Shown in pieces: positions 3,379 to 60,682 of a stretch of 64,000 nt of DNA. The position numbers were made by a program, and so were the translations under genes. The first letter of the stretch is position 1. Every line of letters begins with the position of its first letter. The stretch comes from Squalus acanthias. Lineage: Eukaryota. The stretch lies in the NCBI GenBank assembly GCA_030390025.1, contig CM059430.1:74338001-74402000 (forward strand). The letters run 5' to 3'. Under the pieces are notes generated by a model. The model saw only the letters and a program-made list of their open reading frames with translations. It ran no database searches and was not told the origin of the DNA.

Positions 3379-3497
3379 TTACCTGTCAAAGTTATCAGAC
3401 ATAATGTGGTTGAAGATGATCATCAGTAGTAGAATAATTACCAAGATCACCACTGTGGATCGATAAACCAGGTGGATGGGGAGCACAGAGTGATAAT
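3379..3497 (-). CDS. Gene A putative transmembrane/terminal exon: DYHSVLPIHLVYRSTVVILVIILLLMIIFNHIMSDNFDR*
   Basis: Acceptor tttctccag, phase 1 matching the C1 exon donor. Hydrophobic stretch with S4, L10, R13, T15 at the same positions as the gene B TM exon. The stop TAA overlaps a possible donor (AG|gtaagc at 3383), so further exons cannot be excluded. Linking it to gene A across an 8.3 kb intron is inferred. Confidence 0.65.
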
Positions 3498-3899
3498 CTG
3501 GAGAAAGTATAAGATAATCAATCGTTCACAGCTCACAACCAGAAATCAATCTAACCTGATGATATATTTTCTTCTGCACCCGCAAAGAAAAATTATGCAC
3601 TTGGTGGTTTATATATTTATCTTTCTGTTTTTTTTTATAACAGAAGGTCGCATTTATTTCCAACACCAGATTTCTGATTTTTCACATTGAAGGATAAGAC
3701 CTGATTTCTGTTTGGTCTCCTTAGAAGACGAGACAAACCCAGCAGCTTTCTTGGAATGTGTAATTAGATTCTGACTGCCTAAGTAATCAAGTACTTGGCA
3801 AAGTTTAATTCGATCAATTCTGGCAGCCAGGCCCCAGACAGTGCAGAGCTCACATAGAACAGACAGGGCTAACTCTCGTGGGTTAAGACCTTATCCTAG

Positions 3900-4450
3900 C
3901 CCCCAACAAGTTCCAAACCTTCCTCTCAAACCCTGAGTTTCTGACTTGTTACCTCACAGCAAGTTCCTGACATCCGTCCCAATATCCAGACCTTGCCCCC
4001 TGCCCAAGTTACTGACCTTCCCACGGCCAAGTTTCTGAGCTCCCGTCCCCGCCAAAGTTCCTGACCATCCAGCCCGAGTTCCTGACCTTCTCTCCCTGCC
4101 CAACTCCCTGAAATCCCCCCCCGATTTCCTAACCTTCTCCCCTGCCCATGTTTCTGAACTCCCCCCGAAGTTGCTGACCTTCTCCCAGTGCCCAAGTTCT
4201 TGACCTCCCCGCCAAGTTTCTGACGTCACCCTGCCCCCGTTCCTGACCTTCTCTCCCCTTCCCCTGTGTTCCTGATCGTCACCCCTGCCCAAGTTCCTGA
4301 CATTCATCACTCTGCTCCTGGTTCCTGACCTTCTCACCCTCCCCAAATTCCGCCCCCCAGGGTTCCTGCAATTCTCCACTGACATCGTTCGTCCAGCCCC
4401 AGGTTTCCTGAATTTCTCCCCTCAACATGTTCCTGACATCCCTCCGCCCC
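3900..4450. repeat. Degenerate minisatellite with core (C)AAGTTCCTGACCTT plus C-rich spacers
   Basis: The core GTTCCTGAC and variants recur roughly every 19-40 bp. Confidence 0.8.
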
Positions 4451-4718
4451 CCACATATATGGAGCATTGTGTATGGATCACGGACGGTTAACAGGTTTTT
4501 TGGGTATGAAGTGAATAGTGACAGTGTCATGATTTCCAGATTCCGTCCAATCCAATGATGTCACTTGACACACACACACCGAGCTTTCCAAGAAATCAAG
4601 CAGATTATGTGGAGGAGAGGGAGACAATGCTGTGGGTGTAAAAGGGGTGGAATGGGGTTGAAAGAAGGTGATCCGTCTTAATATCTGGTCACGTTCTCGC
4701 TGTCAGCCCCCGCCTTTT

Positions 4719-5130
4719 AAGAACATAAGAACATAAGAAATAGGCGCAGGAGTAGACCAATCGGCCCCTCGAGCCTGCTCCGCCATTCAATGAGATCATG
4801 GCTGATCTGATCCAACCTCAACTCTAAAGAACAAAAGAAGTAGGAGCAGGACCAGACCACTCATCCCTGGGCCCGCTCCGCCACCCACAGGGCCTTGACC
4901 GATCCGAACTCAAAATCATGTCCAATTTCCAGCCCGCTCCCCGTAACCCCTGATTCCCTTTACTTCTAAGAAACGGTCTATTTCTGTTTTAAATTTATTT
5001 AATGAAGTAGCTTCCACAGCTTCCTGGGGTAGCAAATTCCACAGACCCACTACCCTCTGAGTGAAAAAGTTTCTCCTCATCTCAGTTTTGAAAGAGGAGC
5101 CCCTTATCCTAAGATTATGTCCCCTACTTC
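4719..5130 (-). mobile_element. CR1 LINE 3' end
   Basis: AAGAACATAAGAACATAAG is the reverse complement of the CR1 tail, followed by reverse 3' UTR and the end of ORF2. Confidence 0.8.
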
Positions 5131-5139
5131 TAGACCTGG

Positions 5140-6530
5140 ATCACTGTGCCTTCTCTATTCTTTACCAACCGCCCACCCCACCGAGTTCTTGAACTTCTCT
5201 CCCCCGAATTCCTGACCTCCTCTCCCCTCCCCTCCGTTCCTTTCCCTTCCCCCTTCGATCCTCTCTCTCCCTTCGATGCTCTCTCCCCCTTCTTTCTCTC
5301 TCCCCCTCCTCCCTCTCTCCCTCGTTCCTCTCTCTCTCCCCCCCCTTTCTAGCTTCTCCTCCTCTCTCTATCTCTCTAACTCCACTCATCTCTCTTTCCC
5401 CATCTCTCTCCCGCTCCTCTCTCACTCTTCTCTCTCTCTCCCTTCCTCCTATCTCGCCCCTCTTCTCTTTCTTCATTCTCACCTCACATCTCTTGCTCTT
5501 CTCTCTCTCCCTCCTCTCTCTCCTCATCTCCCTCCCCCTCATCTCTTCCCTTCTCTCTCTCTCCCTTTCTCTCTCCCCTCCTCTCTTCCCTCCTCTCTCT
5601 CTACCCCCCTCTCTAAACCCTCCTCTCTCTCTCCCACCTCTCATATATCTCCCCTCCTTTCTCTCACTCTCGCCCCCTCCTCTGCTTCTCCCTCCTCTCT
5701 CTCCCTCCTCTCTCTCTCCCTCCTTTCTCACTCCCCTCCTCTCTCGCACTCTTCTCTCTCTCTTCCTCTTCTCTCTATTCCAAACTCCTCACTCCCCTTC
5801 TCTCTCCCTCTCTTTCTCTCTCCGCTCCTATCTCCGCCTCCCCTGTCCCTCTCTGCCCCTCCACTCTCTCCCATCCTCTCTCTACCTCCCCATCACTCTC
5901 CTCCCCTCTTCTCTCTCTCCTATCTCTCTCCCTCCTCTCTCGCTCCCCCTCCTCTCGCGCCCTCCTCTCTTTCGTCCTCTTCTCTCTCTCCCCTCTCTCT
6001 CTCTCTCCCTCTCTCTCTCTCACCTCCTCTCTCCCCCTCCTCTCTCTCGCCCCTTCTCCCTCTCCCCTCCTGACTCTCTCCAACCACCACATATCCATCC
6101 CCTCCTTTCTCTCTCGCTCTCGCCCCTTCCTCTTCCACTCCCTCCTCTATCTACCTCCTCTCTGTCTCCCTCCTTTCACACTCCCCTCCTCTCTCGCCCT
6201 CTTCTCTCTCGCTTCCTCATCGGTCTACCCCCCTCCTCTTTCCCCTTCTCTCTCTCTCCCTCTCTTTCTCTCTCCCCTCCTCTCTCCCTCTCCTCTCTCT
6301 CTCTCTCTCTGCCCCTCCACTCTCTCTACCTCGTCTCTCTCTCCTTCTCTGTCACGCCTCGCTCGCTTCCCCTCCTCTCTCGCCCTGCTCTCTCACTTCC
6401 TCTTCTTTCTCTCACCCCTCTCCACTCACCCCTTTTCTCTCCCCCCACCTTGCGATTATCATTCTCTCTTCACTTTCCATCCTCTCTTATCCTCCCCCCG
6501 CCGCGCCCCACACTCGCCTCCCCCCCGGCC
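5140..6530. repeat. About 1.4 kb polypyrimidine (CT-rich) low-complexity tract
   Basis: Almost exclusively C/T on the plus strand; overlapping ORFs are low-complexity artefacts. Confidence 0.95.
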
Positions 6531-6860
6531 ACCACTGAATCCAGTGACTTTCTCCTTATGAAGCCGAGGAAAGCGTGGCCCACCGTTCACGACGCCAAAT
6601 GTGGGTAATGCGCACGCGCGGCGTCGCTAAACAGCGTGACTGCGCAGAAGGGGATCGGGTGCGCATGCGCGGCTCAGGGATTACGCGCACATTCGCCCAA
6701 GGCCGCAAAGATGTTCGTACAGATAATCACAGCAAAAACAGAACAGCTCAGTATATCTTTTTAAGTGAAAGCTCATCGGTAAAGGAGTGACTTTCTCCGT
6801 TGTTTTTAGCGGTACTATGAATAGATTTTGAAAAACATAATGACAACCTTGATAGACCTT

Positions 6861-8400: not shown

Positions 8401-8924
8401 ACTATTGTAGGTGATATAATATTGCATTTGTTGATAACAGATCAGCTCAGACTAACTGGAATTGAGAGAGGATCACGAGAAATTTGAAAGTAATGAACTG
8501 TCCCGATCTTTACAGCAGTTGGGAACTTCACACTTGGTATCGGTAACAATGAATCATTTCCACTCCCTTCCTCCTTTTGGTGATGGTCTTAAAGTTATGC
8601 CCTCTGGTATCTGATTCGCTGATCAAAAAAATCGATTTTTTAAATTTAGCTGTTAATGCTCCTTTAAAATCTTGACATCCCAATTCTATCTCATCTTACT
8701 TATCTCTAGTCAAGGATATATAGGCCCTCTTGTTCTGTTTGTTTCCCTTTATAACTGAAATATCATAGCCTTGATACGACCGTAACAACAAAATTTTGTA
8801 TTGGACTATGTTCTTGACATTCTTTACAAAGTAACTTGCACAAATATGCAAAATGCAGTCTAACCAACGATATGCAGGAGAGCTTTTTGAGCCAGCATGC
8901 AGAGAGTTCTGCAAGAGGTGGGCG

Positions 8925-11260
8925 GTACTGGATATAATTCTAGGGAAAGCAGCCGGGCAAGAGGTAGAAGTGTTAGTAGGAGAGCATTTTGGTGACAGTG
9001 ACCATAATTCGGTGAGATTTAAGGTAGTCATGGAAAAGGACAAAGTTTGACCGGAGATAAAGGTTATAAATTGGGGGAAGGCCGATCTTAATATGATAAG
9101 GCTGGATCTGACCAAAGTGGACTGGGATCAGCTACTTGTAGGAAAATCCACATCAGATCAGTGGGAGTCTTTCTGAAAGGAAATAGAGAGAGTACAACGG
9201 CAACATATTCCCGTAAAGGTCAAGGGTGTGTCCAACAAGCCCAGGGAACCCTGGATGTCAAGGGATATACGAGAATGGATTAGGAAAAAAAGGGAGGCTT
9301 TTGGCAGATACAAAGGACTAAAAACAATGGAAGCCCTAGATGAGTATAGAAAGTGCAGGGGGGTACGTAAAAAAGAAATTAGAAGAGCGAAGAGGGGACA
9401 TGAAATAACACTGACGGGCAAATTAAAGGCACATTCCAAGATGTTTTATAAGTACATTAAGGGCAAGAGAATAACCAGGGAAAGAGTAGGGCCCATTCGG
9501 TAGGAAAGTAGCAATCTGTGTGTAGAGCCAGAAGATGTAGGTGGGGTTTTAAATTAATATTTTGCATCTGTGTTCAATATGGAGAAGGACGATGTCGGCA
9601 TATAAATCAGGCTGGGGGATTGTGATATACTTGAACGAATTAGTATTATAGGGAGGAGGTAGTAGCAGTTTTAGCAGGCTTAAAATGGATATATCCCCAG
9701 GCCCAGACGAGATGTATCCCAGGCTGATGTGTGAGGCAAGGGAGGAGATTGCAGGGGCTCTGACACAAATTTTCAGAACCTTTCTGGCCACAGGGGATGT
9801 GCCAGAGGACTGGAGAACAGCAAACGTTTACCATTATTCAAGAAGGGTAGTAGGGATAAAGCAGGGAATTACAGGCCAGTGAGCCTAACATCAGTGGTAG
9901 GGAAATTATTGGAAATAATTCTGAGGGACATAATTAGTCTCCACTTGGAGAGGCAAGGATAAATCAAGGACAGTCAGCAAGGCTTTATCAAGGGGAGATC
10001 ATGTCTGACCAATTTGATTGAATTTTTTGAGGGGTTTTCTAGGTGTGTGGATGAGGTTAGTGCAGTTGATGTGGTCTGCATGGACTTCAGTAAGGCTTTT
10101 GACAATGTCCCGCATGGGAGACTGGTGAAGAAGATAAAAGCCAATGGGATCCAGGGCAACTTGGCACATTGGATCCAAAATTGGCTTATTGGCAGGAGGC
10201 AGAGGGTGATGGTCGAAGGTTGTTTTTGTGACTGGAAGCCTTTGTCCAGAGGTGTACCGTAGGAATCGGTGCTGTGTCCTTTGCTGTTTCTAGTTTACAG
10301 TAACGATTTAGATATGAAAGTAGGAGGTATGATCAGTAAGTTTGCAGATGACACGAAGATTGGTTGGGTGGTAAATGGCGAGGAGGGAAGCCTCAGGCTA
10401 CAGGACGGTATAGACGGGTTGGTCAGATGGGCAGAACAGTGGTAAATGGAATTTAAAGCTGAAAAGTGTGAGGTAATGCATTTTGGGAGGACTAACAAGG
10501 CAAGGGAATACATAATGAATGGTAGGACCCTTGGAAGGACAGAGTATCAGAGGGACCTTGGCGTGCATGTACATAGATCCCTGAAGGCAGCAGGACAGGT
10601 AGATAAGGTGGTTAAAAAGGCATATGGGATACTTGCCTTCATTTGCCAAGGCATAGAATATAAGTGCAGGGAGTTTATGATGGAGCTGAACAAAACGTTA
10701 GTTAGGCCACAGCTGGAATACTGTGTACAGTTCTGGTCGCCACACTATAGAACGGATGTGATTGCATTGGAGAGGGTGCAGAGGAGATTCAAGAGAATGT
10801 TACCTGGGCTTGAGCGCTTCAGCTATGACGAGAGACTGGACAGGCTGGGGTTGTTTTCCTTAGAGCAGAGAAGGTTGAGCGGGGACCTGATTGAGGTGTA
10901 CAAAATTATGAGGGGCATAGATAGGTTTGATAGAAAGGAACTTCTCCCCTTAGTAGAGGGGTCAATAAACTGGGGGCATAGTTTCAAGGTAAGGGGGAGG
11001 AGGTTTAGAGGGGATCTGAGGAAAAACTTTTCACCCAGAGAGTGGTTAGAATCTGGAACTCACTGCCTGAAAGGGTGGTAGAGGCAAGAACCCTCACAAC
11101 ATTCAAGAAGCATTTAGATGAGCACTTGAAACGCCATAGCATACAGGGCTACGGACCAAGTGCTGGAAAATGGGATTAAAATAGACAGGGTGTGATGGCC
11201 AGCGCGGACACGATGGGCCGAAGGGCCTCTTTCTGTGCTGTATAATTCTATGACTCTATG
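8925..11260 (+). mobile_element. 5'-truncated CR1 LINE (end of APE domain, RT, 3' UTR), with stops and frameshifts
   Basis: SDHNS, SPGPD, DFSKAFD, FADD and RPQLEYCVQFWSP motifs in the ORF fragments; ends in a TATGACTCTATG tail. Confidence 0.95.
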
Positions 11261-11847: not shown

Positions 11848-12153
11848 CTTGGTTGCAAACAGTGTAGCTGACATTTGATGGAATCGAGTTCGAAACGTGA
11901 TATACTTGGCAGCTGTAAACTGTGCCGTGGTCAATCGGTTGTGCCTCTTCTAAGGAGCTGACAACTTCAAACAGTCTATCTTTCTTTGCCATTTGCTCTG
12001 TTCTAAATCCAGTTACAATTTCGGCACCATTTTTATGCCAGGTGAGTTTAAATTCCTTCGAGTAAAAAGCAGCCGTTCTGCACTGAAGTCTGAGAGAAAC
12101 AGATGAAGCCCCTATGAATGGTAAGGAGACAATCTTCAGCGGTGCAGGGGCAG
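11848..12153 (-). CDS. Gene A exon 3: C1-set Ig domain (SIRP/antigen-receptor-constant-like)
   Basis: Acceptor ttttcatttag, donor G|gtaata, 306 nt, phase 1-1. Motifs LQCRTAAFYS, LTWHKNG, FEVVSSL, YSCQVYH match C1-set CxxxxFYP / W / YxCxVxH. Confidence 0.9.
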
Positions 12154-12992: not shown

Positions 12993-13277
12993 TTATACAA
13001 CAAATTTTACACGAGTTCCTATTCCAAACGTTTGAATCCGATCTTTGGCTACACACTGATAAGTTCCGGCTTCCGGGATAGTCACATTCAGGAGAAGAAG
13101 GGAGCCGCTTCCTTTCTTTACTTGAAACAGTTTTATGCTAGCTTCTTGCAGTAAGGCCGCGTCACACTGTCTCAACCAGTAAATGTTTACCTTTCAATGA
13201 TCGAGATCGAAGGAAAAAGGAGATCGGAGCGGCGTTCAGATAAATTAGCTGAATCGCAGAACCTGGTAGCACGCCGT
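12993..13277 (-). pseudogene. Second VJ-type V pseudo-exon in gene A
   Basis: Reads ..FDLDH*KVNIYWLRQ...LLNVTIPEAGTYQCVAKDRIQTFGIGTRVKFVV*. It has an in-frame TGA and a mutated donor, and is clearly paralogous to the V exon at 13658-13969. Confidence 0.85.
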
Positions 13278-13657: not shown

Positions 13658-13969
13658 CGTGAACTACAAGTTGAACACCAGTTCCTTTTGCAACCGTTTG
13701 ATGCTGATATTTTGCTACAGAGTAATACGTTCCGGAGTCCGGGATAGTTACATTCAGGAGGTGAAGGTAGGCGCCGCCTCTCTTTAAACTGAACAATTTT
13801 CTGCTGTCTTCTTGCAGGAAGGTCTTATTACCATCTCTCCACCAGTAAACAAATACGTTTGAATGATCGAGGTCGAAGGGGAAATAACATCGGAAGATAA
13901 CGTCTGTGCCTCTGAGCGCCTTCCTATGTACAACATCTGGAGACAACTTGTCCGATGTGCCCACAGCAA
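13658..13969 (-). CDS. Gene A exon 2: V-set Ig domain with germline-joined J-like G strand; F-strand Cys replaced (YYS)
   Basis: Acceptor tttgttcatag, donor G|gtaagt, 312 nt, phase 1-1, open frame. Motifs VIFRC, VYWWR, LHLLNV..DSGTYYS, KGTGVQLVV. Confidence 0.9.
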
Positions 13970-14314: not shown

Positions 14315-14974
14315 AGACCAAACGCAGATTGGGTGACCGCTTTGCGGAACACCTCCGTTCAGTCCGTAAGGGGGACCCCGAGCTCCCGGTGGCCTGTCAC
14401 TTTAATTCACCGCTTCACTCCCACTCTGACCTCACCGTCCTCGGCCTAATACACTGTTCCACGGAAGCTCAGCGTAAGCTCGAGGAACAGCACCTCATCT
14501 TTCGTTTAGGCACGCTACAGCCCTCTGGACTCAATATCGAGTTCAACAATTTTAGATCATAACCTCAGCTCCAATCACATTTATATTTTATTTTATCCAC
14601 CCTTTTATTTGTCCCCCCCACCTTTTTTTTCCTCCTAGAAGCTGGCAGCTGTCCTTCATTCTGCCAGTGGATTTCACACTTCATTCAGCCTTAATCTGTC
14701 ACATTAACACCACCTCTAGCCTTGCATATCTCTTAATGTCTCTTAATGTCTCTTCATCTCCTCCTTTGTTCCTTTATCCCCTCCCCCTTTTCCCAGCTTT
14801 ACCCTGGCCTTAAATCTATTTGATTTCCAGCTCTTCCCAGTTCTGATGAAAGGTCATCGACCTGAAACGTCAACTCTCTTTCTCTCTCCACGGATGCTGC
14901 CTGGCCTGCTGAGTTTTTCCAGCGTTTTCTGTTGTTATTTCGGATTTCCAGCATCTGCAGTATTTTGCTATCGT
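14315..14974 (+). mobile_element. Penelope-like element fragment (GIY-YIG C-terminus plus terminal region) in intron 1 of gene A
   Basis: ORF LGDRFAEHLRS...RKLEEQHLIFRLGTLQPSGLNIEF; flanked by the 11-bp direct repeat AATAATAAAAG (14304-14314, 14975-14985); absent from the paralogous intron of gene B. Confidence 0.9.
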
Positions 14975-14990
14975 AATAATAAAAGTGTAC

Positions 14991-15045
14991 CTGGATACAA
15001 AATGCCCAGGAAACACATGCCCCAAAGTGACTTATTCATAAACAT
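14991..15045 (-). CDS. Gene A exon 1: signal peptide MFMNKSLWGMCFLGILYP
   Basis: ATG, 55 nt, phase-1 donor CAG|gtacac; splices in frame to the V exon; conserved in gene B. Confidence 0.75.
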
Positions 15046-18689: not shown

Positions 18690-21600
18690 ATTAATTCGGT
18701 TATGGGATCTTGGCGTCGCTGGCAAGGGCACCATTTATTGCCCATTCCTAGTTGCCCTTGAGACGGTGGTGGTGAGCCGTTTCCTTGAACCGCTGCAGTC
18801 CGTGTGGTGAAAGTATTCACACTGTGCTGTTAGGTAGGAAGTTCCAGGAGTTTGACCTAGCGACGATGAAGAATCGGCGATATATTTCTAAGTCAGGATG
18901 GTATGGTACTTGCAGTGTAACTTCTAGGTGGTGGTTTTCCCTTGCGTCTGCTGCCCTTGTACTTCTAGGTGGAAGAGATCGCGGGTTTGGGACGTGCTGC
19001 CGAAGAAGCCTTGGCGAGTTGCTGCAGTGCATCTTGTAGATGGTACACACTGCAGCCACGGTACACCGGTGGTGGAGGGGGTGAATGTATAAGGTGATGG
19101 ACTGGGTGGCAATCAAACGGGCAGCTTTGTCCTGGATGGTGTCGAGCTTCTTGAGTGTTGTTGCAGCTGCACTCATCCAGTCAAGTGGAAAGTATTCCAT
19201 CACACTCCTTACTTCTGCCTTGTAGATGGTGGAAAGGCTTTGGAGAGTCAGGAGGTGAGACACTCGCCGCAGAATACCTAGCCTCTGACCTGCTCTTGTT
19301 GCCACAGAATTTATCTGGCTGATCCAGGTAAGTTGCTGGTAAATAGCGACCCCCAGGATTTTGACGGTGGGAGATTCGGCGGTGGCAATGCCGTTGAATG
19401 TCAAGGGGACGTGGTTAGACTCTTGCTTGTTGGAGATAATCATTGCCTGGCACTTCTGTGGCGCGAATGTTACCTGAAAGTTATCTGCCCAAGCCTGAAT
19501 GTCGTCCAGGCCTTGTTGCATGCGGGCATGGAATGCTTCATTATCTGAGGAGTTGGGAATGGCACTGAACACTGTGCAGTCATCAGCGAACATCCCCATT
19601 TCTGAACTTATGTTGGAGGGAAGGTCATTGATGAAGCAGCTGAAGATGGATGTGCCTAGGAGGCTGCCCTTTGGAACTCCTGCAGCGATGTCCTGGGGCT
19701 GTGATGATTGAGCATCAATCACATCAAACATCTTCCTTTGTGAGAAGTCGCACAACACCAGGTTATAGTCCAACAGATTTATTTAAAATTACAAGCTTTC
19801 GGAGCTGTCCCTCCTTCCTCAGGTAGAGTAGCTGTGAGAGAATCTCCCAGAATTCACAATATAAACACAGGAAAAATGTATTCAAATCTTTCCCTACATC
19901 AAAGACACACTAAGAGCACAGCCAAGACAATGAGATGTGTCCCAGGGGGTCCAACGTGTCAAAATACCTGCTGGCTGCATATCCTCTGCAGTTGACTTTG
20001 GTTCTTGTGTTAGTTTTTTTTTTAAAAAAGGCTGGAAAGACCGGCCATGATGTCAAGTCACGTTCTGTATCGTGACATGAACCCGATATCGCGATTCAGG
20101 CCATCCTCATGAGTGCGCCACTTGGATATCTGTTTCTGCTCTATGATTTTGCGCTGTCGTGTATCCCGAAGGCCGCCTTGGAGAACGCTTACTCGCAGAT
20201 CCGAGGCTGAATGCCCCTCACTGCTGAAGTGTTCCCCGACTGGGAGGCATACCTCCTGACTGGCGATTGTTGCGCGGTGTCCGTTCATACGTTGTCTCAG
20301 TGTCTGCATGGTCTCGCCGATGTACCATGCTCTGGGGCATCCTTTACTGCAACGTATCAGGTAGACAACGTTGGCCGAGTCACATGAGTATGTACCATGT
20401 ACCTTCCTTTGTGGCAGTTATGCCACCAGCCAGTGGAGCGATTTCCCCTTAATTCCCATTGACTCAAGTTTAACTCGTCCTCCTTCATGCCACACTCGGT
20501 CAAATGCTGCCATGACGTAAAGGCAGTCACTCTCACCTTACCTCTGGAATTCAGCTCCTTTGTCCATGTGTGAACGAAGGTTGTAATGAGGTCGGGAGCC
20601 AAGTGGGATTGACGGAACCCAAACTGTGCATCAGTGAGCAGTTTATTGGTGAGTAAGTGACACTGGATAGCACTCTCGATGATACCTTCCTTCACTTTGC
20701 TGATGATTGAGAGTAGACTGATGGGGCGTTAATTGTTCGTGCGGAATTTCTCCTGCTTTTGGTGTAAAGGATATACCTGGGCTGTTTACCACATTGTCGG
20801 ATAGATGCCAGTGTTGTAGCTGTACTGGAACAACTTGGCTAGAGGCGTGGCTAGTGTGGAGCACCAGTCTTCAGCATGATAGCAGGGATGTTGGCGGGGC
20901 CCATAGCCTTTGCTGTATCCAGTGCGCTCAGCCGTTTCTTAATATCACTTGGAGTGAATCGAATTGGCTATAAGACTGGCTTCTGTGATGGTGGGGACCT
21001 CGGGAGTAGGCCGATATGCATCATCCACTCTGCAGTTCTGGCTGAAGATGATTGCAAACGCTTCAGCCTTGTTTTTTGCACTCACGTGCTGGGCTCCACC
21101 ATCAGTGAGGATGGGGATATTCATGTAGCCTCCTACTCCCATTAGTTGTTTAATGGTCGACCACCATTCACGACTGGATGTGGCAGGACTGCAGAGCTTT
21201 GATCGGATCCATTGATTGTGGGATCGCTTAGCCCCGTCGATAAAATGCTGCTTCCGCTTTTTTGCATGCTTGTAGTCCTGTGTTGCAGCTTATCATGTTG
21301 GAACCACATTTTTATGTACGCCTGGTGATGCTCCCGGAATGCTCTTGTACAAGCCTTAACAACCAGCGTTGGTCCCCTGGCCTGGTGGTAATGGAGAGTG
21401 AGGGATATGCCGGGCATGAGATTACAAATTGTGGTCGAATACAATTCTGCTGATGGCCCAAAGCGCCTCATGGATGACCAGATTTGACCTGCTAGATCTG
21501 TTCTGAATCTATCCCATTTAGCACGGTGGTCGTGCCACACAACACGATGGAGGATGTCCTCAATGTGAAGACGGGACTTCGTCTCCAAAATGTCTATGCG

Positions 21601-22200
21601 GTGGTCACTGCTACCAATACTGTCATGGACGGATGCATCTGCGGCAGCTAGATTGGTGAGGACGAGGTCAAGTAGGTTTTTCCCTCGTTTTGTTTCTCTC
21701 ACCAACTGTCGCAGGCCCTGACTGGCAGTTAAGTCGTTCAGGACTCGGCCACCTCGGTCATTACTGGTGCTACCGAGCCACTCTTGGTAATGGACTTTGA
21801 AGTCCCCCACCCATAGTACATTCTGTGGCCTTGCTACTCTCAGTGTTTCTTCCAAGTTGTGTTCAGCATGGAAGAGTACTGATTCATCAGCTGAGGGAGG
21901 GCAGTAGTTGGTAATCAGCAGGAGCTTTCCTTGCCCATGCTTGACCTGAAGCCATGAGACTTCATGGGGGCCGAAGTCAATGTGAAGGACTCCCAGGGCC
22001 ACTACTTCCCGACTGTATACCGCTGTAGTGCTAACCTTGGTGGTGTTGTCCTGCTGGTGGGCCAGGACGTACCCAGGGATGGTGTAGGAGGTGTTTGGAA
22101 CATTGGCTGAAAGGTATGATTCTGTGAGTATGACGGTGTCAGGCTGTTGGTTTACTAGTCTGTGCGACAGCTCTCCCGATTTTGGCACAAGTCCCCAGAC
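18690..22200 (-). mobile_element. CR1/L2-group LINE ORF2 (APE endonuclease plus RT), decayed, interrupted by a Penelope fragment
   Basis: ORF 21142-22233 has ILTES, VGDF, LDLVLTN, SDH; ORF 18817-19773 has GVPKGSLLG and FADD. Confidence 0.9.
19743..20402 (-). mobile_element. Penelope-like element fragment (second family)
   Basis: QTLRQRMNGHR...VGEHF...GLNRD GIY-YIG C-terminus; direct repeat CTTCCTTTGTG at 19732-19742 and 20403-20413. Confidence 0.85.
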
Positions 22201-23079
22201 TGTAACAATCTTTACTAAGGAATTGTAAAACATGTGGGAAAATATAATTTTTATTCGGTCAGTTGGAAATCAATTGTACAAATGCCGGTCTTTAAGTTAT
22301 TTTCCCACGCCACAGATTAACTCAGACTGGGTACGTGCTCTCTGCTCTTTGGTCTGTGTCACCCATAGGCCCTTTAATATGGAATGCACTGACTGGTGGC
22401 TAAGCGGGTATAATAAATGGGAGCTTCAGCTTGTGAGAAAATCACAAAGTTACTAGATACATTCGACATGCAGGATAACTTCCAGATGTCGGTGAATTGG
22501 TGACCGTCAGGCTCATTAATTAAATATTCTTCTAAGCAATCGACCTGCTTTGTGGAAAGGAATTAAGTTTAATCCAGTGCAAACATAACAATAATGGCTA
22601 GGCAGTATTCCATTATTAACAGTTCCTCGTGGATTGTCCCGAAATTGCTGCTGAAGAGGTGCTGCTTCGGCAGCTCGGCTTCTTGGGAAGAAATATGGTT
22701 TTCTAATTCACACGGAACCGTCCATGTAGCTGACAATCTGATACACGGACGTCTTCGGCTGTGGTATTAGCTACACAGCAAAGTAATTGAAGGGAAGCGA
22801 TGTAATTGCTGTTTATCTAAATAAGACTAGTATTCATGATAAGGATACCGACAGAGCCACATCAACACTTTTTAATGTTCATAAGCTACCAACAGGCTCT
22901 ACGTTAGAGTAAGTAGGACATGTCCAGGGGATCAACTTTGCCCTGTATATGTGAATTCCTTCGAATCATGTGAATTGTTCCCCATATTTCCGAGAAATAT
23001 AGCAACACTAGTTCAGTTATAATGTGAGGCTTAAATTATCCTAATATTTACTGAAAAATCAATGTAAAAATCAAAGCAA

Positions 23080-50790: not shown

Positions 50791-53466
50791 TAATCAGTCA
50801 CCTCAATTGTTTGCGTTCGACTTCCTGAAATAAAAATCAAAACATATCTACAAATAGAAGTCAGATATATAATTAGAAAAACTTGGTAGATTACATTGGT
50901 GGGTTTTCCTGAACGACAGTGTGTCGATCAATGAAACTGCATTTGTCTTAACATTACGGGAGATTTCGTCATGTAAATAACATTTTAATTTGAAGCCATA
51001 TTGCACAGACACCATTTTGGCAAAATATTCATCACTATATGAATATAATTTATTGCCCAGATATATTTTTGCTTATTTACTACAAATGTAATCCGAATTA
51101 TTTCAGATATCAAAATTTCGTCGCCACTTCTCTCAAGAATAATTTACATTTCCGTTGTTAAGAAACTTCACGGGGCATGCATTTATTATATTGTTTCTGA
51201 AATGGTGCTCACCGATCATATAAATGACTTCAGAAGAAACGGTGTTGATGCTATGAAACGTTAAACAGTGTGATGTCTGAAACTGTAATTCATCGAAAGA
51301 CAAGAAATGCATCAACAGCATAAAATTGCACCAGTATAATGGCAGCGAAGATCGTTAAAGGAACAAATTGCATTAATACAGGACGCTCAGAAATTTTTTA
51401 TCTAATTCAAGTAATGAAATGTTGGCTTAGCTGAATGAAAATATAAACGGATAAGTTTGAGGACGGGCAAAGGTGCAGGCGAATGATACGGTTTTCGAAT
51501 ATTTTTGAGCACAGACGGCAAGAGTAAGCCAGATAGACAGTGAATTCCGAAGGAAGACACTGTGTGCTTAAAACTGCTAACTCAGTTGTGGATCGGAGTA
51601 GGAGATCACAAGGAGTAACATGATATCAGCGGGGTGGCGGTTGCTTGTGGGATGTATGGCTGGAGCAGTTCACTTGGGCTGGCAGGAGTGCTTCTCACGC
51701 ATTTGGGCACAAGCTACTCTCTCACACACTCTCTCTCACACACTCTCTCAGACATGCTCTCACACACTCTCTCACACAGTCTCTCTTCCACAATCTCTCT
51801 CACACACTCTCTCAGGGAAGGATTTCTGGATGAGGATGTGGATTTTGGGACCAAGGGAACCTCTGGAACTCGAAAAGGATGGAATTTCGAGAATAAGAAC
51901 ATTTTCTGGGCGAGAGTACGAATTCCAATGTTCTGAACGATTTGAATTTGATGGAGAGTGTAACCAGAGTTCCCAGTGGAGGTGTTTAGTGATAACGAAC
52001 TGCGATATTTGCTAGGCATGCGACAGGCTCGAGGTAGGGTGTGTGAGAGGTAACAGTAGAGAGGAGATCTCTTGGAGGAGTACATGAAGAGGGTGCTGAA
52101 TGGAGGACGAAGATGTTGAGTGGATCCACTTAAGTAGTCTTGATAGCAAAAGAGATGTGAGGAATGGCGCTCAGCTTACTTCGCAGTTAAACTATAAAGT
52201 GAGACATTCAAGATGATGACACATACTAGGCCGGTATCTGGAGTGGTTACTGGATTCAACCACTGCAATAGGAAATAAGCTTTGCTGACATTAAATGTAA
52301 AAACTTTTGTCTCACGAGGGCCTGAATATTCGAAATGGGAAGATCAGTCTTCGGCGGAATATGCTTAGTCGCGAAGTAGGCTGGGTATCGAGTGTCTATC
52401 TGATCCCGGTCCTGTCCTGCTAGGTCACTATGAGATCGCCCATCATTATTGTTCAGGTAGCGAATTATGGATGGAAAACTGCGCTAAATTTAAATGATTA
52501 TATGGGCAGAGGGCGAAAAAGCATTGGAATCGGTCGACTAATAATATTTGCATAAAAACTGCCAGTTCTGAATAAAAGCAAAAAAATAAATAAACCGGAA
52601 TTACACGAACCAGTCAACAACTGCGGAGATAAGAGATAGATGAACAATTGGGATTTGTCTCATCTTGTGAATACAAGAATGAAACAACAGCATTTACATA
52701 TAACCCGGTAAAATGTTAGTGAGTGGGAGGGGACAAATACACAAAGGGAGGAACTAGTGATGGAATAATATTAGGATGAAGTAAAAATTAATCTGTCAGG
52801 AAATAGAATGAAATATTAAGAAATTAAAGACAATAAACAAACAAATAATTCGTGATCATTTGTTGCAGTAAAACCCGTCCCAATGAGAAAAACGTGAAAG
52901 CAGGAGAAAGGGAAATACAAATAGGGAGATTCTGCACTTGTTTAACGATACAAATCAAATCCAGAGAAACTATAAGATGCAATCGGACTGTAGACGAAAA
53001 GATAGAGAATAATATACTGGTTCACCGTGTCAAACTTGATGGTGTGATCAAAGGGGATGGGAAAAGTGTTGACACACATTGCGTAAGTTAAAAGCCGGAA
53101 TTGAGCGTTTCCAACAAAGAATGGTAGAAGGCAAAAACTCGTTCCAAGAATTAGCAATAGAAGGGAAGCCTGGAGAACGAGCAGTAACAGAGTAAAATGG
53201 AAAAGCAACGTAAACGCATCTGTGACTGACAAATCGCTCGAATCTTTTCAGCGTATCCCCGTTTGCCAAACTTAGCTGCAGATCTTCACCGCTGCGTATA
53301 CTAGACTTGTATCTTTGTGGTTAGATCTCGACGTTTTCTTAGAACCAGTCAAATTCATAAGTCAGTTTGCTATCAACGGCGCTCTGTTTGTCTCTATAAC
53401 AAACATTGAGAATAATGATTTAGTTTTTCTTCAAAAAAGCTAAATGAAAATTTCGTCAAATTAATT

Positions 53467-53640
53467 TTAATATCTTCGCAAAACCAAACTTGTTCTGATT
53501 GGCATGATTATTGTTTCCACGTATGAACTGAGCTGTACCTCTGCATACACTGTACATCCTTCGTGTTGTTTAGATTTTTCACCTTCGTTGGAGCCGATCA
53601 GGTCCAGAGCAGCGTTGTCCTCAGCTCCCTCTACTTTTTC
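53467..53640 (-). CDS. Gene B putative cytoplasmic exon with ITSM-like TVYAEV
   Basis: Acceptor gactttatag, phase 0; EKVEGAEDNAALDLIGSNEGEKSKQHEGCTVYAEVQLSSYVETIIMPIRTSLVLRRY*. A possible internal donor (GAG|gtacag) follows TVYAE. Confidence 0.6.
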   Translation of the reverse strand, partial: EKVEGAEDNAALDLIGSNEGEKSKQHEGCTVYAEVQLSSYVETIIMPIRTSLVLRRY

Positions 53641-53691
53641 CTATAAAGTCAATATTTAACATTCATTAAGTTACTTTTTCAGTTTTGACGA

Positions 53692-56640: not shown

Positions 56641-57316
56641 TAAATGTTTGCTCTAGCACCAACTCTACTTTTCCCAGCTTCCACTAGACCGCAACTTGCT
56701 GGTTTAATATAGAGAAGCGCATGTAAATACAAGTTGTTCGAGGCAGCCAGATGGTGAAAAAGTAACAGATGCAGGTTTTACAGTATAGACCGTTTGGGTA
56801 CGATGAGCTGGGAGATGCCAGGTTAGATCATCGGGCAAACAGAATAGGATGGTTTAATTTTGAAAAGCGTAGAAAGGCAGGGTAACAATTATGGACTGTA
56901 TTGGCAGGTAAAAATGCACTATGGCGATCGGAGTTCTCCCTGGTGTCGTTTAATGTAAAATGATCAATTTTGGGAATACTATTCAAGGCGCTATTACCTG
57001 GTTAGCCCGAAGGAACGAGCAACCTTTTGTGACCTCCTCAATACAACAATTGCTCGTTTAAAATATTATGATTTTTTAATTAATAAAATTTAAATGAACA
57101 CTATATCCGACTGTTTAAAATCGGGGCTGGAGTTTCTAAATGTTTCCGTCCTTATTCTATATTTAAATACTTACAGAATAAATTGTGTTTTCTACAGAAC
57201 AGGGAAAAACCAAGACAAAATTCAAAAGTAGTTAAAACAAATTAATGAGAGTGCAAAGTCTGAATGCTTTAGTTGACGTTTGAAACAAAGTAGCGGGAAA
57301 AATAAGATGACCATAC

Positions 57317-57360
57317 CCGATCTTCATGCTGAATAGTATTTACTGAATTTCTCTTGCCGC
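57317..57360 (-). CDS. Gene B putative short cytoplasmic exon GGKRNSVNTIQHEDR
   Basis: Strong acceptor ttttaattttattttccaccag, donor CGG|gtatgg, 44 nt, phase 1 to 0, bridging the TM exon and the 53640 exon in frame. Confidence 0.6.
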
Positions 57361-57883
57361 CTGGTGGAAAATAAAATTAAAATGAATCGACAAGAACGAG
57401 GTGCTATTTCGGTTCATCATCAGACCAATGAAATCAAATATAATGCGGTTAGTTGCAGGTTAAAATAGGGCCACATTTGCATGTTATATCTCAAGAAAGT
57501 TAAAACCGCGCGCATCGTTTGTGTTACGTCCAAGGTGATGAATTTGTGCAAACATCATTGCACCCATGAAATTCAATGATAGAGATCTAGATATCCACCA
57601 ATAGGGTTGAGCAATCTGCTACGATCCTGCTATTTTTCAAGATACGATCTAATATTTGAGTTTACACAAGATGTATGTATGAACATATTTTCTCATCAAC
57701 CCGTCAGTTAGACTGTGCCATTCAGCAGCTCCGCTCCCAAAGCTGTTATCTGTACTCAGTACATTTTAGCCTATACCTACATGCAAAGTATTTGTTTCAG
57801 TATATGTACACTTCTAAGTTAAATAACTTTTTATAATGTGCTGTCAGAAAATCAATGATCAGTAAATTGGGGATGGCTCATAC

Positions 57884-57997
57884 CTTTGGATGTAATGAAT
57901 GGAAGTGCCTTCACAGTGATAATGGCCAACAGTAGAATTATCACCGCACCCCCGGTACATCTAGCGATTAGAACAACACTGATCGTAGAGACAAACA
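57884..57997 (-). CDS. Gene B transmembrane exon VFVSTISVVLIARCTGGAVIILLLAIITVKALPFITSK
   Basis: Acceptor tttgatag, donor G|gtatga, 114 nt, phase 1-1; hydrophobic segment containing Arg. Confidence 0.75.
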
Positions 57998-58812
57998 CTA
58001 TCAAATTGATATAACATCAAAATTATAATGTATGGAATGTAAAACGTATATACAGAGTTCAAATTTTATAAACATATTTCCAAATATACTCCTATGAGAA
58101 TAAAACAACGTGCATAAAGCCTCACCAGATCGATTTCATTATCTCTGTATTCACCAGATTTGTGTGAAACCGGAAACAAATAGTTTGAAATACCCAGTAG
58201 TTTGGATACATAGCAGCAATATTAAATAATGGGAAGAAAACTACACCGAATGGTCGTCTTCTAATTGACGCGATAAAGCGCATTGGATAAGAATTCATCT
58301 GGTCGCGAGATGTCGAAAATAATCAATTAGGTTTGGATGTTTTCTCTGATCAGTATATAGCACAAACTCTGAAAGATATTAAGTTAAGAATTCGTTCGTG
58401 TTTCTCTTTGCAGCCAATCTTCAACAAGGCTTTTTTCCAACTCTCCACAAATGCGACCAAATTAATTATAATTTCATATTTTGTATAGGGTCGAGGGAGC
58501 CGCACTGTGCATCTGCTGATGCTGAGAATGACCTTGGACTGCTTTTGGCTGCAGGAGTGTGAAGGCCTTCAATTACCCACCTCCGTACCTACACCCCTCA
58601 CTAACTTTTCCAGTTTCTGGCATCAAAGCTCAACGTGCTCCCCCTTCTAAGCTTGCAACGTTATGACAGTTAGTCTGAATTATGTAAGCAATGCTGAAGA
58701 CTGGTGTTCACTATTGGCTAAGTTGCTTACGTCCAACTTAATTCTCATCTGATTGAAATAAGCAATATGAGATGGAATCGCGATTAATGTACAACGTGTG
58801 ATTTAATATTAC

Positions 58813-59118
58813 CTTCGTTAGCAACGGTGTAGCTGGCATTAGCTGGAATTGAGTTAGAAACGTGATGTACTTGACAGGTGTAAACTGTGCCGTGCATGAT
58901 TGGCTCTGTCTCCTCTAAGGAGCTGATAACTTCATACAGTCCCTCTGTCTTTGCGTGTTGTTCATTTCTAAATCCAGTCAGGATTGTGGTACCATTTTTA
59001 TGCCAGGTGAGGTTAAAGTCGTTCGGGTAAAAAGGAGCCGTTCTGCACTGGAGCCTCAGAGAAACGGATGAAGCCCCTTCGGATGATACGGATACAATTA
59101 TCAGGGGAGCAGGGGAAG
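58813..59118 (-). CDS. Gene B exon 3: C1-set Ig domain
   Basis: 306 nt, phase 1-1; LQCRTAPFYP, LTWHKNG, YEVISSL, YTCQVHH. Confidence 0.92.
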
Positions 59119-59329
59119 CTAAATGATAAAGAACAAAATTCAGATAAAGCAAAACATCTGACATGTATTCTATCTACTCTTTGATTTTGTAAAATAACAA
59201 ACAGCTCTTTCCGGGCAGCGTAGTTGTATTGATAATCATTATTTATCCTAACTGGAGCCCAATCTAAGGTTTTCTTCGCTGAAGCTAAACGTTCCTCCCC
59301 CGCGGTATTGACATATCAACGTTTTATAT

Positions 59330-59590
59330 AGTAAAGTTGATTTACAACATTGGGCCTCTTTTTGTTAATACCAATGTGTTCGAATCGCCAGGCTGCGCTT
59401 AAATTGTTGCCAGAGTACAGTCGAGGTTCTGCTGCTATACCGAGAAGATTTCTTCTTCTGGAAAATGACAATCGAGTTCGGACCTTGGTCTGGACTACAA
59501 CACTTGCTTTATCCTCTGCGTTTCGCCAGTTCCACGGTACGCCGTTCAGGAATTTTATGTGGAATGCAGAATCTGGAAGCGCCCTCTAAA
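59330..59590 (-). pseudogene. Degenerate V-like pseudo-exon in intron 2 of gene B
   Basis: Remnants VPWNWR, VRTRL and LDCTLATI*AQPGDS in shifting frames. Confidence 0.4.
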
Positions 59591-59968
59591 AGATGCTAAT
59601 CGGAATCGTGCTCTTCTAATTAGATAAACGACATTTAAAAATGTATAATATTTCGAGTAAGCCCAAGATTCTTCATCCTGCCAATTTGTGCTCAAACTTA
59701 AATCCTCTTTTATTTCCCAGCCTTGATTTCACTTTTATCGACAAACAGAAAATCAAATATTTATTGCTGATATAGGTCAGTTGTCACGTTTTGCAGAGAC
59801 CCTGGGACTGGAAACTTTCCATGTTGTTGAACACATGTCCTTCTAAACAAATAGAAAGCTCTACTATTTTATACAGAATGCATTGCTGTATTGAACGCCT
59901 TTGTTAAGCGCAGTTTAAATAGCTGCAGCAACTAAACACTTCACGTTTCTAATTGCAGCCACACTTAC

Positions 59969-60280
59969 CATATACAATAAGTTGTACACCACTATTTTTT
60001 GCAACCGTTTGTTGCTGATATTTTGCTACAGCGTAATACGTTCCGGCGTCCGGGATAGTTACATTCAGGATGTGAAGGTAGGCGCCGCCTCTCTTTACAC
60101 TGAACAATTTTCTGCTGTCTTCTTGCAGGAAGGTCTTATTACCATCTCTCCACCAGTAAACAATTACGTTTGAATGATCGAGATCGAAGGGGAAAGAACA
60201 TCGGAAGGTAACTTCTGTGCCTCTGAGCGCCTTCTTTTTTACAATATCCGGAGACACCTTGTCCGATGTGCCCATAGCAA
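59969..60280 (-). CDS. Gene B exon 2: VJ-type V-set domain, F-strand Cys replaced (YYA)
   Basis: 312 nt, phase 1-1, canonical splice sites, open frame; VTFRC, VYWWR, DAGTYYA, KNSGVQLIV. Confidence 0.9.
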
Positions 60281-60627
60281 CTATGAACAAAAAATGCATA
60301 TTCGGGTTTAATCATTCAGAAATAAGGAAGATGAACTGCAGCACCAAAATAACATCGTGCGTCCAGTCCTTTCCAAATGATACATTTGTAATTCAATGTA
60401 CCTAATTATAAGACTTATTTTCCAGTTTCTGAATGAGTTTTCTCATAGAATTATCATAAATAACATTACCTTTGTCAGCCAGTTATTTCCCTCTGGCAAG
60501 GAACACATGATATGAAAACAATTCATCAAATTAAAACAGTATAAACAATACCCGTTTGCACATCAACTATAAGCTGATGTGCTGTGTCAGGAACAGTTAA
60601 TGCATACAAAAAGTAATAAAAGTGTAC

Positions 60628-60682
60628 CTGGATACAAAATGCACAGGAAACGCATGCCCCAAAGTGACACATTCATAAACAT
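60628..60682 (-). CDS. Gene B exon 1: signal peptide MFMNVSLWGMRFLCILYP
   Basis: 55 nt, phase-1 donor CAG|gtacac, paralogous to 14991-15045. Confidence 0.72.

What the first reader, a model, noticed from the sequence alone, without database searches (positions are those of the whole stretch)
3379..60682. Tandem family of non-rearranging VJ-C1 receptors with paired-receptor architecture
Seen: two minus-strand genes with leader, V, C1 and TM exons, all phase-compatible with open frames. The V exon already includes a J-like G strand and I saw no RSS next to it. Both TMs have Arg at exon position 13. Gene A appears to stop about 10 residues after the TM, while gene B continues into a tail with TVYAEV. 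Established: V+C1 is the antigen-receptor chain layout, and C1 domains are confined to a few families (Ig, TCR, MHC, tapasin, SIRP, some B7). A charged TM residue with a short tail marks adaptor-coupled activating receptors (NKp30, SIRPbeta), and TxYxxV is an ITSM. Inference: this is an activating/regulatory pair of TCR-chain-like innate receptors in a cartilaginous fish, relevant to proto-antigen-receptor models. It may currently be annotated only as SIRP-like or NCR3-like.
Basis: partly seen in the sequence, partly recalled or inferred. Interest (0 to 1): 0.85.

Follow-up and report, generated by a model that had tools for sequence, protein, structure and literature searches.

The report
Shark SIRP-like paired receptor genes
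Two neighbouring shark genes encode cell-surface immune receptors with one variable-like and one constant-like antibody domain, and they belong to a large, unstudied cartilaginous-fish family related to the mammalian SIRP receptors that switch immune cells on or off.

Summary
Two same-strand paralogs each have leader, one-exon V(J)-like, C1-set and TM exons. All ten proposed junctions are GT/AG, and the window has no RSS-like site.

They are not a new kind of receptor. They belong to a family found in sharks, rays and a chimaera. All 20 clusters looked up are chondrichthyan, and databases auto-name them SIRP-alpha-like, SIRP-beta-1-like, NCR3LG1-like or Ig-lambda-like. A 34-sequence family profile aligns to a rodent SIRP-alpha from the V domain through the TM to the four-tyrosine tail (hhalign 99.3%, E 2.9e-20). 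The tail alone scores above all 200 shuffles.

- **Gene A** is the activating type: TM Arg and a short tail. Its closest relative is Heptranchias P0163.
- **Gene B** has an inhibitory-type TM with Gly replaced by Arg, and a decayed tail.
- **Both V domains** lack the second canonical Cys.
- **Gene A** also carries a dead partial V exon.

No RNA evidence was obtained. Unchecked notes of this scan report similar genes elsewhere in this genome.

The parts
14991..15045 (-). Gene A leader exon (MFMNKSLWGMCFLGILYP, split codon)
   Evidence: The ATG and the donor CAG|GTACAC are present. It matches the N-termini of P0163, P0002 and P0165.
13658..13969 (-). Gene A V(J)-like Ig exon, phase 1-1, 312 nt. 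The second canonical Cys is replaced by Ser (TCT). The J-like strand is GTGVQLVV.
   Evidence: It is 83% identical to gene B and 72% to P0163.
12996..13229 (-). Partial V pseudo-exon in the V-C1 intron of gene A. It has an in-frame stop and no donor, and it keeps YQC and FGIGTRV.
   Evidence: tblastn E 2.7e-21, 53% over 78 aa. Sequence read. It lies in the duplicated segment seen.
11848..12153 (-). Gene A C1-set exon, phase 1-1, 306 nt
   Evidence: Pfam C1-set 38.6 bits against a cut-off of 21. Splice sites.
3379..3497 (-). Gene A connecting-peptide and TM exon with Arg at residue 13 (DYHSVLPIHLVYRS...). A donor follows 3383, or the frame reads through to TAA at 3379-3381.
   Evidence: tblastn with P0163 gives E 2.1e-13. 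P0004 and P0165 give about 6e-10. Acceptor and donor.
60628..60682 (-). Gene B leader exon
59969..60280 (-). Gene B V(J)-like Ig exon. The second canonical Cys is replaced by Ala (GCT).
   Evidence: It is 77% identical to P0163. The AlphaFold2 model has pLDDT 90.7.
58813..59118 (-). Gene B C1-set exon
   Evidence: Pfam C1-set 44.4 bits. The best solved-structure matches are all C1 domains.
57884..57997 (-). Gene B TM exon of the inhibitory type (…VVLIARCTGGAVIILLL…). Its Arg stands where relatives have Gly (IAGC).
   Evidence: tblastn with P0002 gives E 4.7e-07. Alignment columns. Codon AGA.
57317..57360 (-). Gene B cytoplasmic exon 1 (GGKRNSVNTIQHEDR)
   Evidence: It matches P0002 GGKRTSLNTSQHADR. 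Splice sites.
53539..53640 (-). Gene B cytoplasmic exon 2. The first tyrosine motif is missing (a 4-residue gap against relatives). The second is kept as TVYAE, followed by the donor GAG|GTACAG.
53272..53391 (-). Gene B last exon, broken. The remains of the third and fourth tyrosine motifs lie in two different frames, and the frame set by the splice has a TGA at 53362-53364.

Best explanation
These are two tandem paralogs of a cartilaginous-fish multigene family of type I membrane receptors. The layout is leader, one-exon V(J)-like Ig domain, one C1-set domain, and TM. The family is homologous over its whole length to the SIRP receptors of bony vertebrates. Like SIRPs, it comes in two forms: inhibitory, with an uncharged TM and a tail holding two pairs of ITIM-like tyrosines, and activating, with an Arg in the TM and a short tail.

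Gene A is an activating-type member. Its outer-leaflet Arg would pair with an acidic residue of an ITAM adaptor. An FcR-gamma or CD3-zeta type is my guess from the position of the Arg; this step is inferred.

Gene B descends from an inhibitory-type gene. It gained an Arg at the same TM column and has lost three of its four tyrosine motifs. It is either an inhibitory-to-activating convert or a gene in decay.

Shown here: the exon structure, the domain types, family membership and the SIRP homology. Inferred: expression, ligand, adaptor choice and signalling.
For: - Splice sites and phases are canonical. There is no RSS-like site. C1-set scores above the Pfam cut-off.
- A phmmer scan of 1.84 billion representatives with the gene B V exon found 205 proteins at E <= 0.001. 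The four best (59-75% identity) are shark proteins of 292-412 aa, three of them with V-C1-TM.
- All 20 clusters looked up are chondrichthyan, from sharks, rays and Callorhinchus. Several map to one chromosome per species.
- hhalign of the 34-sequence family profile against rodent SIRP-alpha gives probability 99.3%, E 2.9e-20 and 314 aligned columns covering residues 24-485 of 509.
- The tail-only profile (15 of 34 rows) scores 32.0 against the SIRP-alpha tail. None of 200 shuffles reaches it (mean 9.2, maximum 17.6), and the four tyrosines align in order.
- The gene A TM exon matches the activating relatives P0163, P0004 and P0165 (E 2e-13 to 6e-10).
- Among 70 held family proteins, 5 carry the same (P)VHL(I/M)YR(S/T) TM motif and 20 have tails with two or more tyrosine motifs.
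- C1 dN/dS between A and B is 0.47.
Against: - There is no transcript evidence. No listed run holds the stretch, and 0 of 3 runs laid any contig on 57200-60750.
- Tetrapod SIRPs have two C1 domains; these genes have one.
- The ectodomain alone does not single out SIRP. Ig light-chain V-C scores slightly higher per stretch than SIRP-alpha d1-d2 (68 against 62 bits).
- ITIM pairs at this spacing occur in other receptor families (recalled), so the tail match could be partly convergent. I had no other ITIM tails to use as a control.
- Both V domains lack the second Cys, and V dN/dS is 0.94 on only about 27 differences. That fits relaxed constraint as well as ligand-driven change.
- The gene A TM exon lies 8.3 kb from the C1 exon, across repeat-rich DNA.
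Confidence: 0.7

Rival explanations
1. The genes are relics of a proto-antigen receptor: TCR or Ig chain-like non-rearranging VJ-C1 receptors closer to Ig/TCR than to any innate receptor family.
For: - The V-C1 layout has the J-like strand inside one exon, and there is no RSS.
- The family profile scores Ig light-chain V-C stretches highest (68.3 and 68.8 bits). UrIg2 ranks second by whole-chain score.
- NCBI names some members Ig lambda-1 light chain-like.
Against: - The TM and cytoplasmic tail align with SIRP-alpha, not with TCR.
- No conserved membrane-proximal interchain Cys is seen across the family.
- The V model is a short, I-set-like domain. Its best Foldseek matches are obscurin-like-1, titin, CRTAM and BTLA.
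- SIRP ectodomains are themselves close to antigen receptors (recalled), so an Ig-like score does not separate the two views.
Confidence: 0.12
2. One or both copies in this window are non-functional. They would be decaying duplicates that kept open Ig exons by chance.
For: - Both V domains lack the canonical second Cys.
- V dN/dS is 0.94.
- The gene B tail has lost its first motif, and its last exon carries frameshifts and a stop.
- Gene A carries a dead V exon and an 8.3 kb intron that holds a run of short reverse-transcriptase-like ORFs (recognised by eye only) and 2.6 kb of CT-rich simple sequence.
- No RNA support.
Against: - All ten junctions, both leaders and four Ig exons are intact.
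- C1 dN/dS is 0.47.
- The missing Cys is shared with an annotated Heptranchias protein, P0163, which has the same full architecture. That argues for a tolerated lineage trait.
- Tail truncation together with a TM Arg recurs in relatives of other species: P0001, P0101 and P0164.
Confidence: 0.25
3. The genes are members of the B7/butyrophilin or tapasin-related families. These are V-C receptors or ligands, which would make the genes ligands rather than signalling receptors.
For: - Some relatives are auto-named tapasin-related or NCR3LG1-like.
- PD-L1 V and CD276 appear among weaker sequence and fold matches.
- The Atlas lists tapasin-related clusters at 0.95.
Against: - These matches score below the SIRP and Ig matches: CD276 gets 86 bits for the whole chain against 106 for SIRP-alpha.
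- The charged-TM and ITIM-tail dichotomy is that of a signalling receptor.
- C2-set_2 and C2-set_3 scores for the second domain fall below their cut-offs, while C1-set passes.
Confidence: 0.05

Closest known systems
SIRP family (SIRP-alpha inhibitory, SIRP-beta activating) of bony vertebrates
   Same: - A V-type domain with a J-like strand, followed by C1-set domain(s) and a TM.
- Paired inhibitory forms (four tyrosines in two pairs) and activating forms (basic TM residue, short tail).
- Full-length profile homology: 99.3%, E 2.9e-20.
- Tail alignment above 200 of 200 shuffles.
   Different: - One C1 domain instead of two.
- The activating residue is Arg near the outer leaflet. SIRP-beta has Lys (recalled).
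- The V domain is shorter and I-set-like in the model.
- In this window the V domains lack the second Cys.
- The second motif is TxYAxT, not TxYxxI/V.
- CD47 binding and synteny were not tested.
Ig light chains and TCR chains
   Same: V plus C1 layout, split leader, phase-1 exons and similar per-stretch profile scores (68 bits).
   Different: There is no RSS and the V-J is a single exon. There is no conserved interchain Cys. The TM and tail are of a signalling-receptor type.
UrIg / UrIg2 of elasmobranchs (PMC12227049, section 7 read; PDB 9dmx)
   Same: A non-rearranging VJ exon followed by C1-type domains in cartilaginous fish. The gene B C1 exon hits UrIg2 at E 5.5e-10.
   Different: Nurse shark UrIg2 has nine C1-type domains; these genes have one. 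The V-C1 stretch scores 53 bits, below SIRP-alpha and Ig L. UrIg is described there without a paired activating/inhibitory form.
NKp30 (NCR3)
   Same: A non-rearranging VJ-type domain. The TM Arg coupling to ITAM adaptors is recalled, not tested here.
   Different: NKp30 has no C1 domain (recalled). No NKp30 sequence was compared here.
NITRs of bony fish; KIR and LILR of mammals (functional analogues, recalled)
   Same: Clustered multigene families with activating members (charged TM) and inhibitory members (ITIM), and recurrent conversion of inhibitory genes into activating ones.
   Different: They have no C1-set domain. No homology was tested here.

Membership tests
SIRP family | N-terminal V-type Ig domain with a J-like G strand, encoded in one exon | tested here: met
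   A GxGxxLxV-like strand lies inside the V exon. V-set scores 23.1 and 25.3 bits, just under the cut-off of 26. The fold model is a short V/I-type domain.
SIRP family | Two membrane-proximal C1-set domains (V-C1-C1) | tested here: not met
   Each gene has one C1 exon, and the window has no further C1 match below E = 1. Nearly all relatives also show one C1.
SIRP family | Sequence homology to a bona fide SIRP over ectodomain, TM and tail | tested here: met
   hhalign of family profile A1 against rodent SIRP-alpha P0171 gives 99.3%, E 2.9e-20, 314 columns. BLASTP of P0033 against P0171 gives E 2e-11. The tail alone scores 32.0, reached by 0 of 200 shuffles.
SIRP family | Inhibitory members carry four cytoplasmic tyrosines in two ITIM-type pairs | tested here: inconclusive
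   This is met in relatives such as P0033, P0042 and P0159. Gene B keeps only one of the four.
SIRP family | Activating members have a basic TM residue and a short tail | tested here: met
   Gene A has Arg at TM exon residue 13 and a stop about 10 residues after the TM. P0163, P0176, P0004 and P0165 show the same.
SIRP family | CD47 binding; orthologous chromosomal position | not testable with these tools
Rearranging antigen receptors (Ig/TCR) | Separate V and J segments flanked by RSS | tested here: not met
   The J-like strand lies within the V exon, which splices directly to C1. There are 0 RSS-like sites in 64 kb.
Rearranging antigen receptors (Ig/TCR) | Canonical B-F disulfide in the V domain | tested here: not met
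   Gene A has Ser and gene B has Ala at the second Cys position. At least 90% of 34 relatives keep Cys there.
UrIg / UrIg2 | VJ exon followed by several C1-type domains | tested here: not met
   These genes have a single C1 exon. Nurse shark UrIg2 has nine C domains according to PMC12227049, section 7.
NKp30 (NCR3) | Single V domain directly followed by stalk and TM, with no C domain (recalled) | tested here: not met
   A C1-set exon lies between the V and TM exons.

The most novel reading that the evidence does not exclude
The family would be the cartilaginous-fish counterpart of SIRP, and possibly its ancestral single-C1 form. That would date SIRP-type paired receptors to the base of jawed vertebrates. 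It would also place a non-rearranging VJ-C1 receptor, with an ectodomain as close to Ig light chains as to SIRP, beside UrIg as a second surviving relative of the pre-RAG antigen receptor.

Within the family, this window would catch an inhibitory gene (B) turning into an activating one, and a lineage of V domains that work without the canonical disulfide.
Probability: 0.25. Interest if true: 0.7.

Novelty: new variant of a known kind. Interest (0 to 1): 0.5.

Why it matters
Non-rearranging VJ-C1 genes are the material for models of how antigen receptors arose. The two shark papers I read discuss UrIg, UrIg2 and NKp30 or NCR3. A text search of each found no mention of SIRP.

A V-C1-TM family present in sharks, rays and a chimaera, and tied to SIRP by its TM and tail, adds a testable candidate to that discussion. 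It would also push paired SIRP-type signalling back to early jawed vertebrates.

For this window alone the yield is more modest. It holds two further members of a family that databases already predict. They have some unusual traits: no V disulfide, and a half-converted inhibitory gene.

Tried and rejected
- **Transcripts.** The look-up of sequencing runs listed only three small runs of the same species label, holding none of the sampled words. Read laying on 57200-60750 laid nothing in 0 of 3 runs. Transcription therefore remains untested.
- **Bony-vertebrate relatives by word-indexed search.**
  - With P0002, 17 of 18 hits were chondrichthyan and one was a rodent SIRP-alpha.
  - With profile A1, the 24 hits at E <= 2.8e-57 were all chondrichthyan. 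The other 18 of 42 were multi-Ig proteins such as hemicentin, titin and pIgR-like.
  - This tool cannot show that the family is absent outside cartilaginous fish.
- **Literature.**
  - Eight searches turned up no held paper describing SIRP-like V-C1 receptors of cartilaginous fish.
  - Only the listed titles and abstract openings were seen. For 'SIRP' plus 'cartilaginous' that was 20 of 67, all about cartilage tissue or antibodies.
  - The hits for 'PRARP' were unrelated acronyms.
  - The UrIg 2023 paper (PMC10530332) and the chicken PRARP paper are not held. PRARP and Xenopus VJ-C1 genes could therefore not be compared.
  - Supplements were not opened.
- **Origin of the pseudo-V exon.** I asked whether it comes from a P0176-like paralog. 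This was not supported: identity is 55% to P0176 against 53% to the V exon of gene A itself.
- **Further exons in gene A.** I looked for an inhibitory-type TM or tail exon inside gene A, or a cytoplasmic exon below 3383. None was found at E < 1. A 44-nt exon could escape this search.
- **V and C1 trees.** Trees against Ig, TCR, UrIg and NKp30 were not built, because no tool gave me those reference sequences.
- **Joined model.** The joined spliced protein was not searched or folded. Every search used single exons or natural database proteins.

Full report
**What is there**

Two genes lie on the minus strand about 45 kb apart, with the same exon plan. Gene A has:
- leader 14991-15045
- Ig exon 13658-13969
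- C1 exon 11848-12153
- TM exon 3383-3497

Gene B has:
- leader 60628-60682
- Ig exon 59969-60280
- C1 exon 58813-59118
- TM exon 57884-57997
- cytoplasmic exons 57317-57360 and 53539-53640
- a broken last exon at 53272-53391

All acceptors are AG and all donors are GT. The Ig exons are 312 and 306 nt in phase 1-1.

A self-comparison shows a tandem duplication. Window 11818-18402 matches 58783-64000 at 70-87% identity, and the similarity stops just below the C1 exon.

tblastn with every exon found only these copies, plus one partial V at 12996-13229. That partial V has an in-frame stop and no donor, so it is a pseudo-exon. It keeps YQC and FGIGTRV, which the two live V exons have lost.

Of eight large ORFs taken from 9.2-50.1 kb, two at 18.8-22.2 kb carry reverse transcriptase and endonuclease domains of a LINE. 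I saw no further family member in the window.

**Domain types**

The second Ig exon is a C1-set domain by Pfam: 38.6 and 44.4 bits against a cut-off of 21. The solved chains shown for it (the best 60) include Ig heavy-chain constant domains, UrIg2, IgNAR, MHC class II beta-2 and SIRP-alpha.

The first Ig exon scores 23.1 and 25.3 bits on V-set, just below the cut-off of 26. It scores similarly on Ig_2, Ig_3 and I-set.

An AlphaFold2 model of the gene B exon, built with 41 relatives as the alignment, has pLDDT 90.7. It shows only about 12 residues between strands C and D. Its best Foldseek matches mix I-set domains (obscurin-like-1, titin) with short V-like domains (CRTAM, BTLA, Ig VL, PD-L1, TREM-1). 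E-values are near 1e-6 and TM-scores are 0.6-0.74.

It is therefore a short V/I-type domain that carries a J-like G strand (GTGVQLVV in A, NSGVQLIV in B).

A scan for heptamer, 12 or 23 spacer and nonamer found 0 sites in the 64 kb. The exon splices straight to C1, so no rearrangement is needed.

Both genes have lost the second canonical Cys: TCT Ser in A and GCT Ala in B.

**Relatives**

phmmer with the gene B V exon against 1.84 billion representatives gave 205 proteins at E <= 0.001 and 4 at E <= 1e-30. The best single-domain matches are proteins of 220-450 aa with the V-C1-TM layout.

All 20 clusters I looked up come from cartilaginous fish: Heterodontus, Chiloscyllium, Heptranchias, Scyliorhinus, Carcharodon, Mustelus, Mobula, Hemitrygon, Leucoraja and Callorhinchus.

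Their automatic names include:
- 'tyrosine-protein phosphatase non-receptor type substrate 1-like' (SIRP-alpha-like)
- 'signal-regulatory protein beta-1-like'
- 'NCR3 ligand 1-like'
- 'immunoglobulin lambda-1 light chain-like'
- 'tapasin-related protein-like'
- 'uncharacterized'

Several members sit on one chromosome in each species.

The closest protein is P0163 of Heptranchias perlo. It is 72% and 77% identical to A and B in V, and 72% and 80% in C1. It also lacks the second Cys.

**The family is a paired-receptor family**

In the 34-sequence alignment the V domain shows the consensus YYC...GNGTGxxLxV. The C1 domain shows FYP...W...YTCxVSH.

After C1 the proteins split into two types.
- **Activating type.** The TM carries an Arg in its outer part and the tail is short. 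Five of 70 held proteins share the motif (P)VHL(I/M)YR(S/T) with gene A.
- **Inhibitory type.** The TM is uncharged, reads IAGCAGG at its start, and is followed by a long tail. Twenty of 70 have two or more tyrosine motifs of the forms LTYAAL and TVYA(E/Q)T.

In the alignment, the Arg of the first type and the Gly of IAGC occupy the same column.

**Gene A**

Its TM exon lies 8.3 kb below the C1 exon. The DNA between holds a run of short reverse-transcriptase-like ORFs (recognised by eye) and 2.6 kb of CT-rich simple sequence.

The assignment rests on three points:
- a phase-1 acceptor
- the absence of any other C1 or V between the two exons
- tblastn matches of P0163 (E 2.1e-13), P0004 and P0165 (about 6e-10), which run from the end of C1 into DYH.V.PVHLIYRS

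The frame reaches TAA two codons past a consensus donor. P0163 ends at almost the same point, while P0004 and P0165 splice on to a short further tail. I cannot tell which gene A does.

**Gene B**

Its TM is of the inhibitory type, but with Arg (AGA) in place of the Gly (IARC for IAGC). The tail is decayed compared with P0002, P0159 and P0160.
- The first motif is gone: there is a 4-residue gap where relatives have NLTY.
- The second motif is kept as TVYAE, directly before the donor GAG|GTACAG.
- The last exon shows the third motif (DKQSAVDSKLTY) in one frame and the fourth (NLTGS...SLVYAAV) in another. The frame set by the splice runs into TGA at 53362-53364.

The same combination of an Arg inside an inhibitory-type TM and a shortened tail appears in P0001, P0101 and P0164 of other species. 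This may be a recurrent route from inhibitory to activating genes. That reading is an inference.

**Relation to known families**

The family profile aligns to a rodent SIRP-alpha with probability 99.3% and E 2.9e-20 over 314 columns. The alignment runs through V, one C1 (skipping one SIRP C1), the TM and the tail, with the tyrosines matched.

The tail-only profile (15 of 34 rows) scores 32.0, with E 1.9e-5. None of 200 shuffled SIRP tails reaches it (mean 9.2, sd 2.0, maximum 17.6).

Against solved structures the per-stretch scores are:
- 68.3 and 68.8 bits for Ig light-chain-type V-C
- 62.0 for SIRP-alpha d1-d2, plus 43.3 for d3
- 53.2 for UrIg2 V-C1

The ectodomain alone cannot separate SIRP from antigen receptors. 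The TM and tail point to SIRP.

The protein atlas also lists a SIRP-beta-like cluster among the nearest, at 0.96. This is a lead only.

I therefore file the genes as SIRP-like in function and as SIRP homologs. I do not file them as SIRPs in the strict sense, because the two-C1 feature was tested and not met, and orthology is untested.

**Selection and function**

Between A and B, the V exon has dS 0.098 and dN 0.092, a ratio of 0.94. The C1 exon has dS 0.387 and dN 0.183, a ratio of 0.47.

The much lower dS in V suggests a recent exchange of the V region between the two genes. The V ratio rests on about 27 differences. It cannot separate relaxed constraint from ligand-driven change.

No RNA data were available. 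Expression, ligand and adaptor are all inferred. I did not search or fold a joined spliced model.

**Literature and other notes**

In the held library I found no paper on SIRP-like V-C1 receptors of cartilaginous fish. Only listings and abstract openings were seen.

I read section 7 and searched passages of PMC12227049, and passages of PMC10751288. Both discuss UrIg, UrIg2, NKp30/NCR3 and (in one) PRARP as non-rearranging VJ genes. Neither contains the term SIRP. Papers not held, and supplements, may say more.

Other unchecked notes of this scan report a pseudogenised VJ-C1-TM gene about 33 kb beyond this window, and a pair of VJ-C1-TM inhibitory genes on another piece of this genome.

**Verdict**

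The finding is real and largely read correctly. It is a variant of a known kind rather than a new kind. Interest is moderate.

Noticed in passing
window 4000-6600: About 2.6 kb of CT-rich simple sequence lies inside the long C1-TM intron of gene A. GC skew there reaches -0.55, and long Ser/Leu/Pro 'ORFs' appear on the + strand.
   Followed up: no
window 8850-11081 (+): A run of short + strand ORFs in the long intron of gene A looks like a LINE reverse transcriptase by eye. Pfam gave no hit at E <= 0.01 for the two pieces tried.
   Followed up: partly
window 18817-22233 (-): LINE remains: an ORF with RVT_1 (47.1 bits) and an ORF with the endonuclease-reverse transcriptase domain (41.1 bits).
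   Followed up: partly
window 38862-39497 (+): An ORF with a Myb/SANT-like DNA-binding domain (PF13873, 28.5 bits). It lies inside the stretch that another note of this scan calls an R2 element. I did not check that note.
   Followed up: no
window 14315-14976: About 660 bp in the leader intron of gene A have no counterpart in gene B. This is probably an inserted repeat, and it carries a 77-aa + strand ORF at 14329-14562.
   Followed up: no
proteins P0034, P0031, P0038, P0004, P0163, P0176 and gene A TM exon (window 3383-3497): Activating-type TMs end with a conserved acidic or amide residue followed by His (DH, NH or EH) at the inner membrane border. I know no function for it.
   Followed up: no
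proteins P0001 (Heterodontus), P0101 (Hemitrygon), P0164 (Stegostoma): Inhibitory-type TMs in other species have also acquired an Arg and have shortened or motif-poor tails, as gene B has.
   Followed up: partly
window 11849-11870 (end of gene A C1 exon): Gene A has a Cys in YTVCNQ just before the TM exon, where relatives have Gly, Ala or Asp. Some relatives (P0002, P0165) have a Cys in the connecting peptide instead. This might allow disulfide-linked dimers, but it is not conserved.
   Followed up: no
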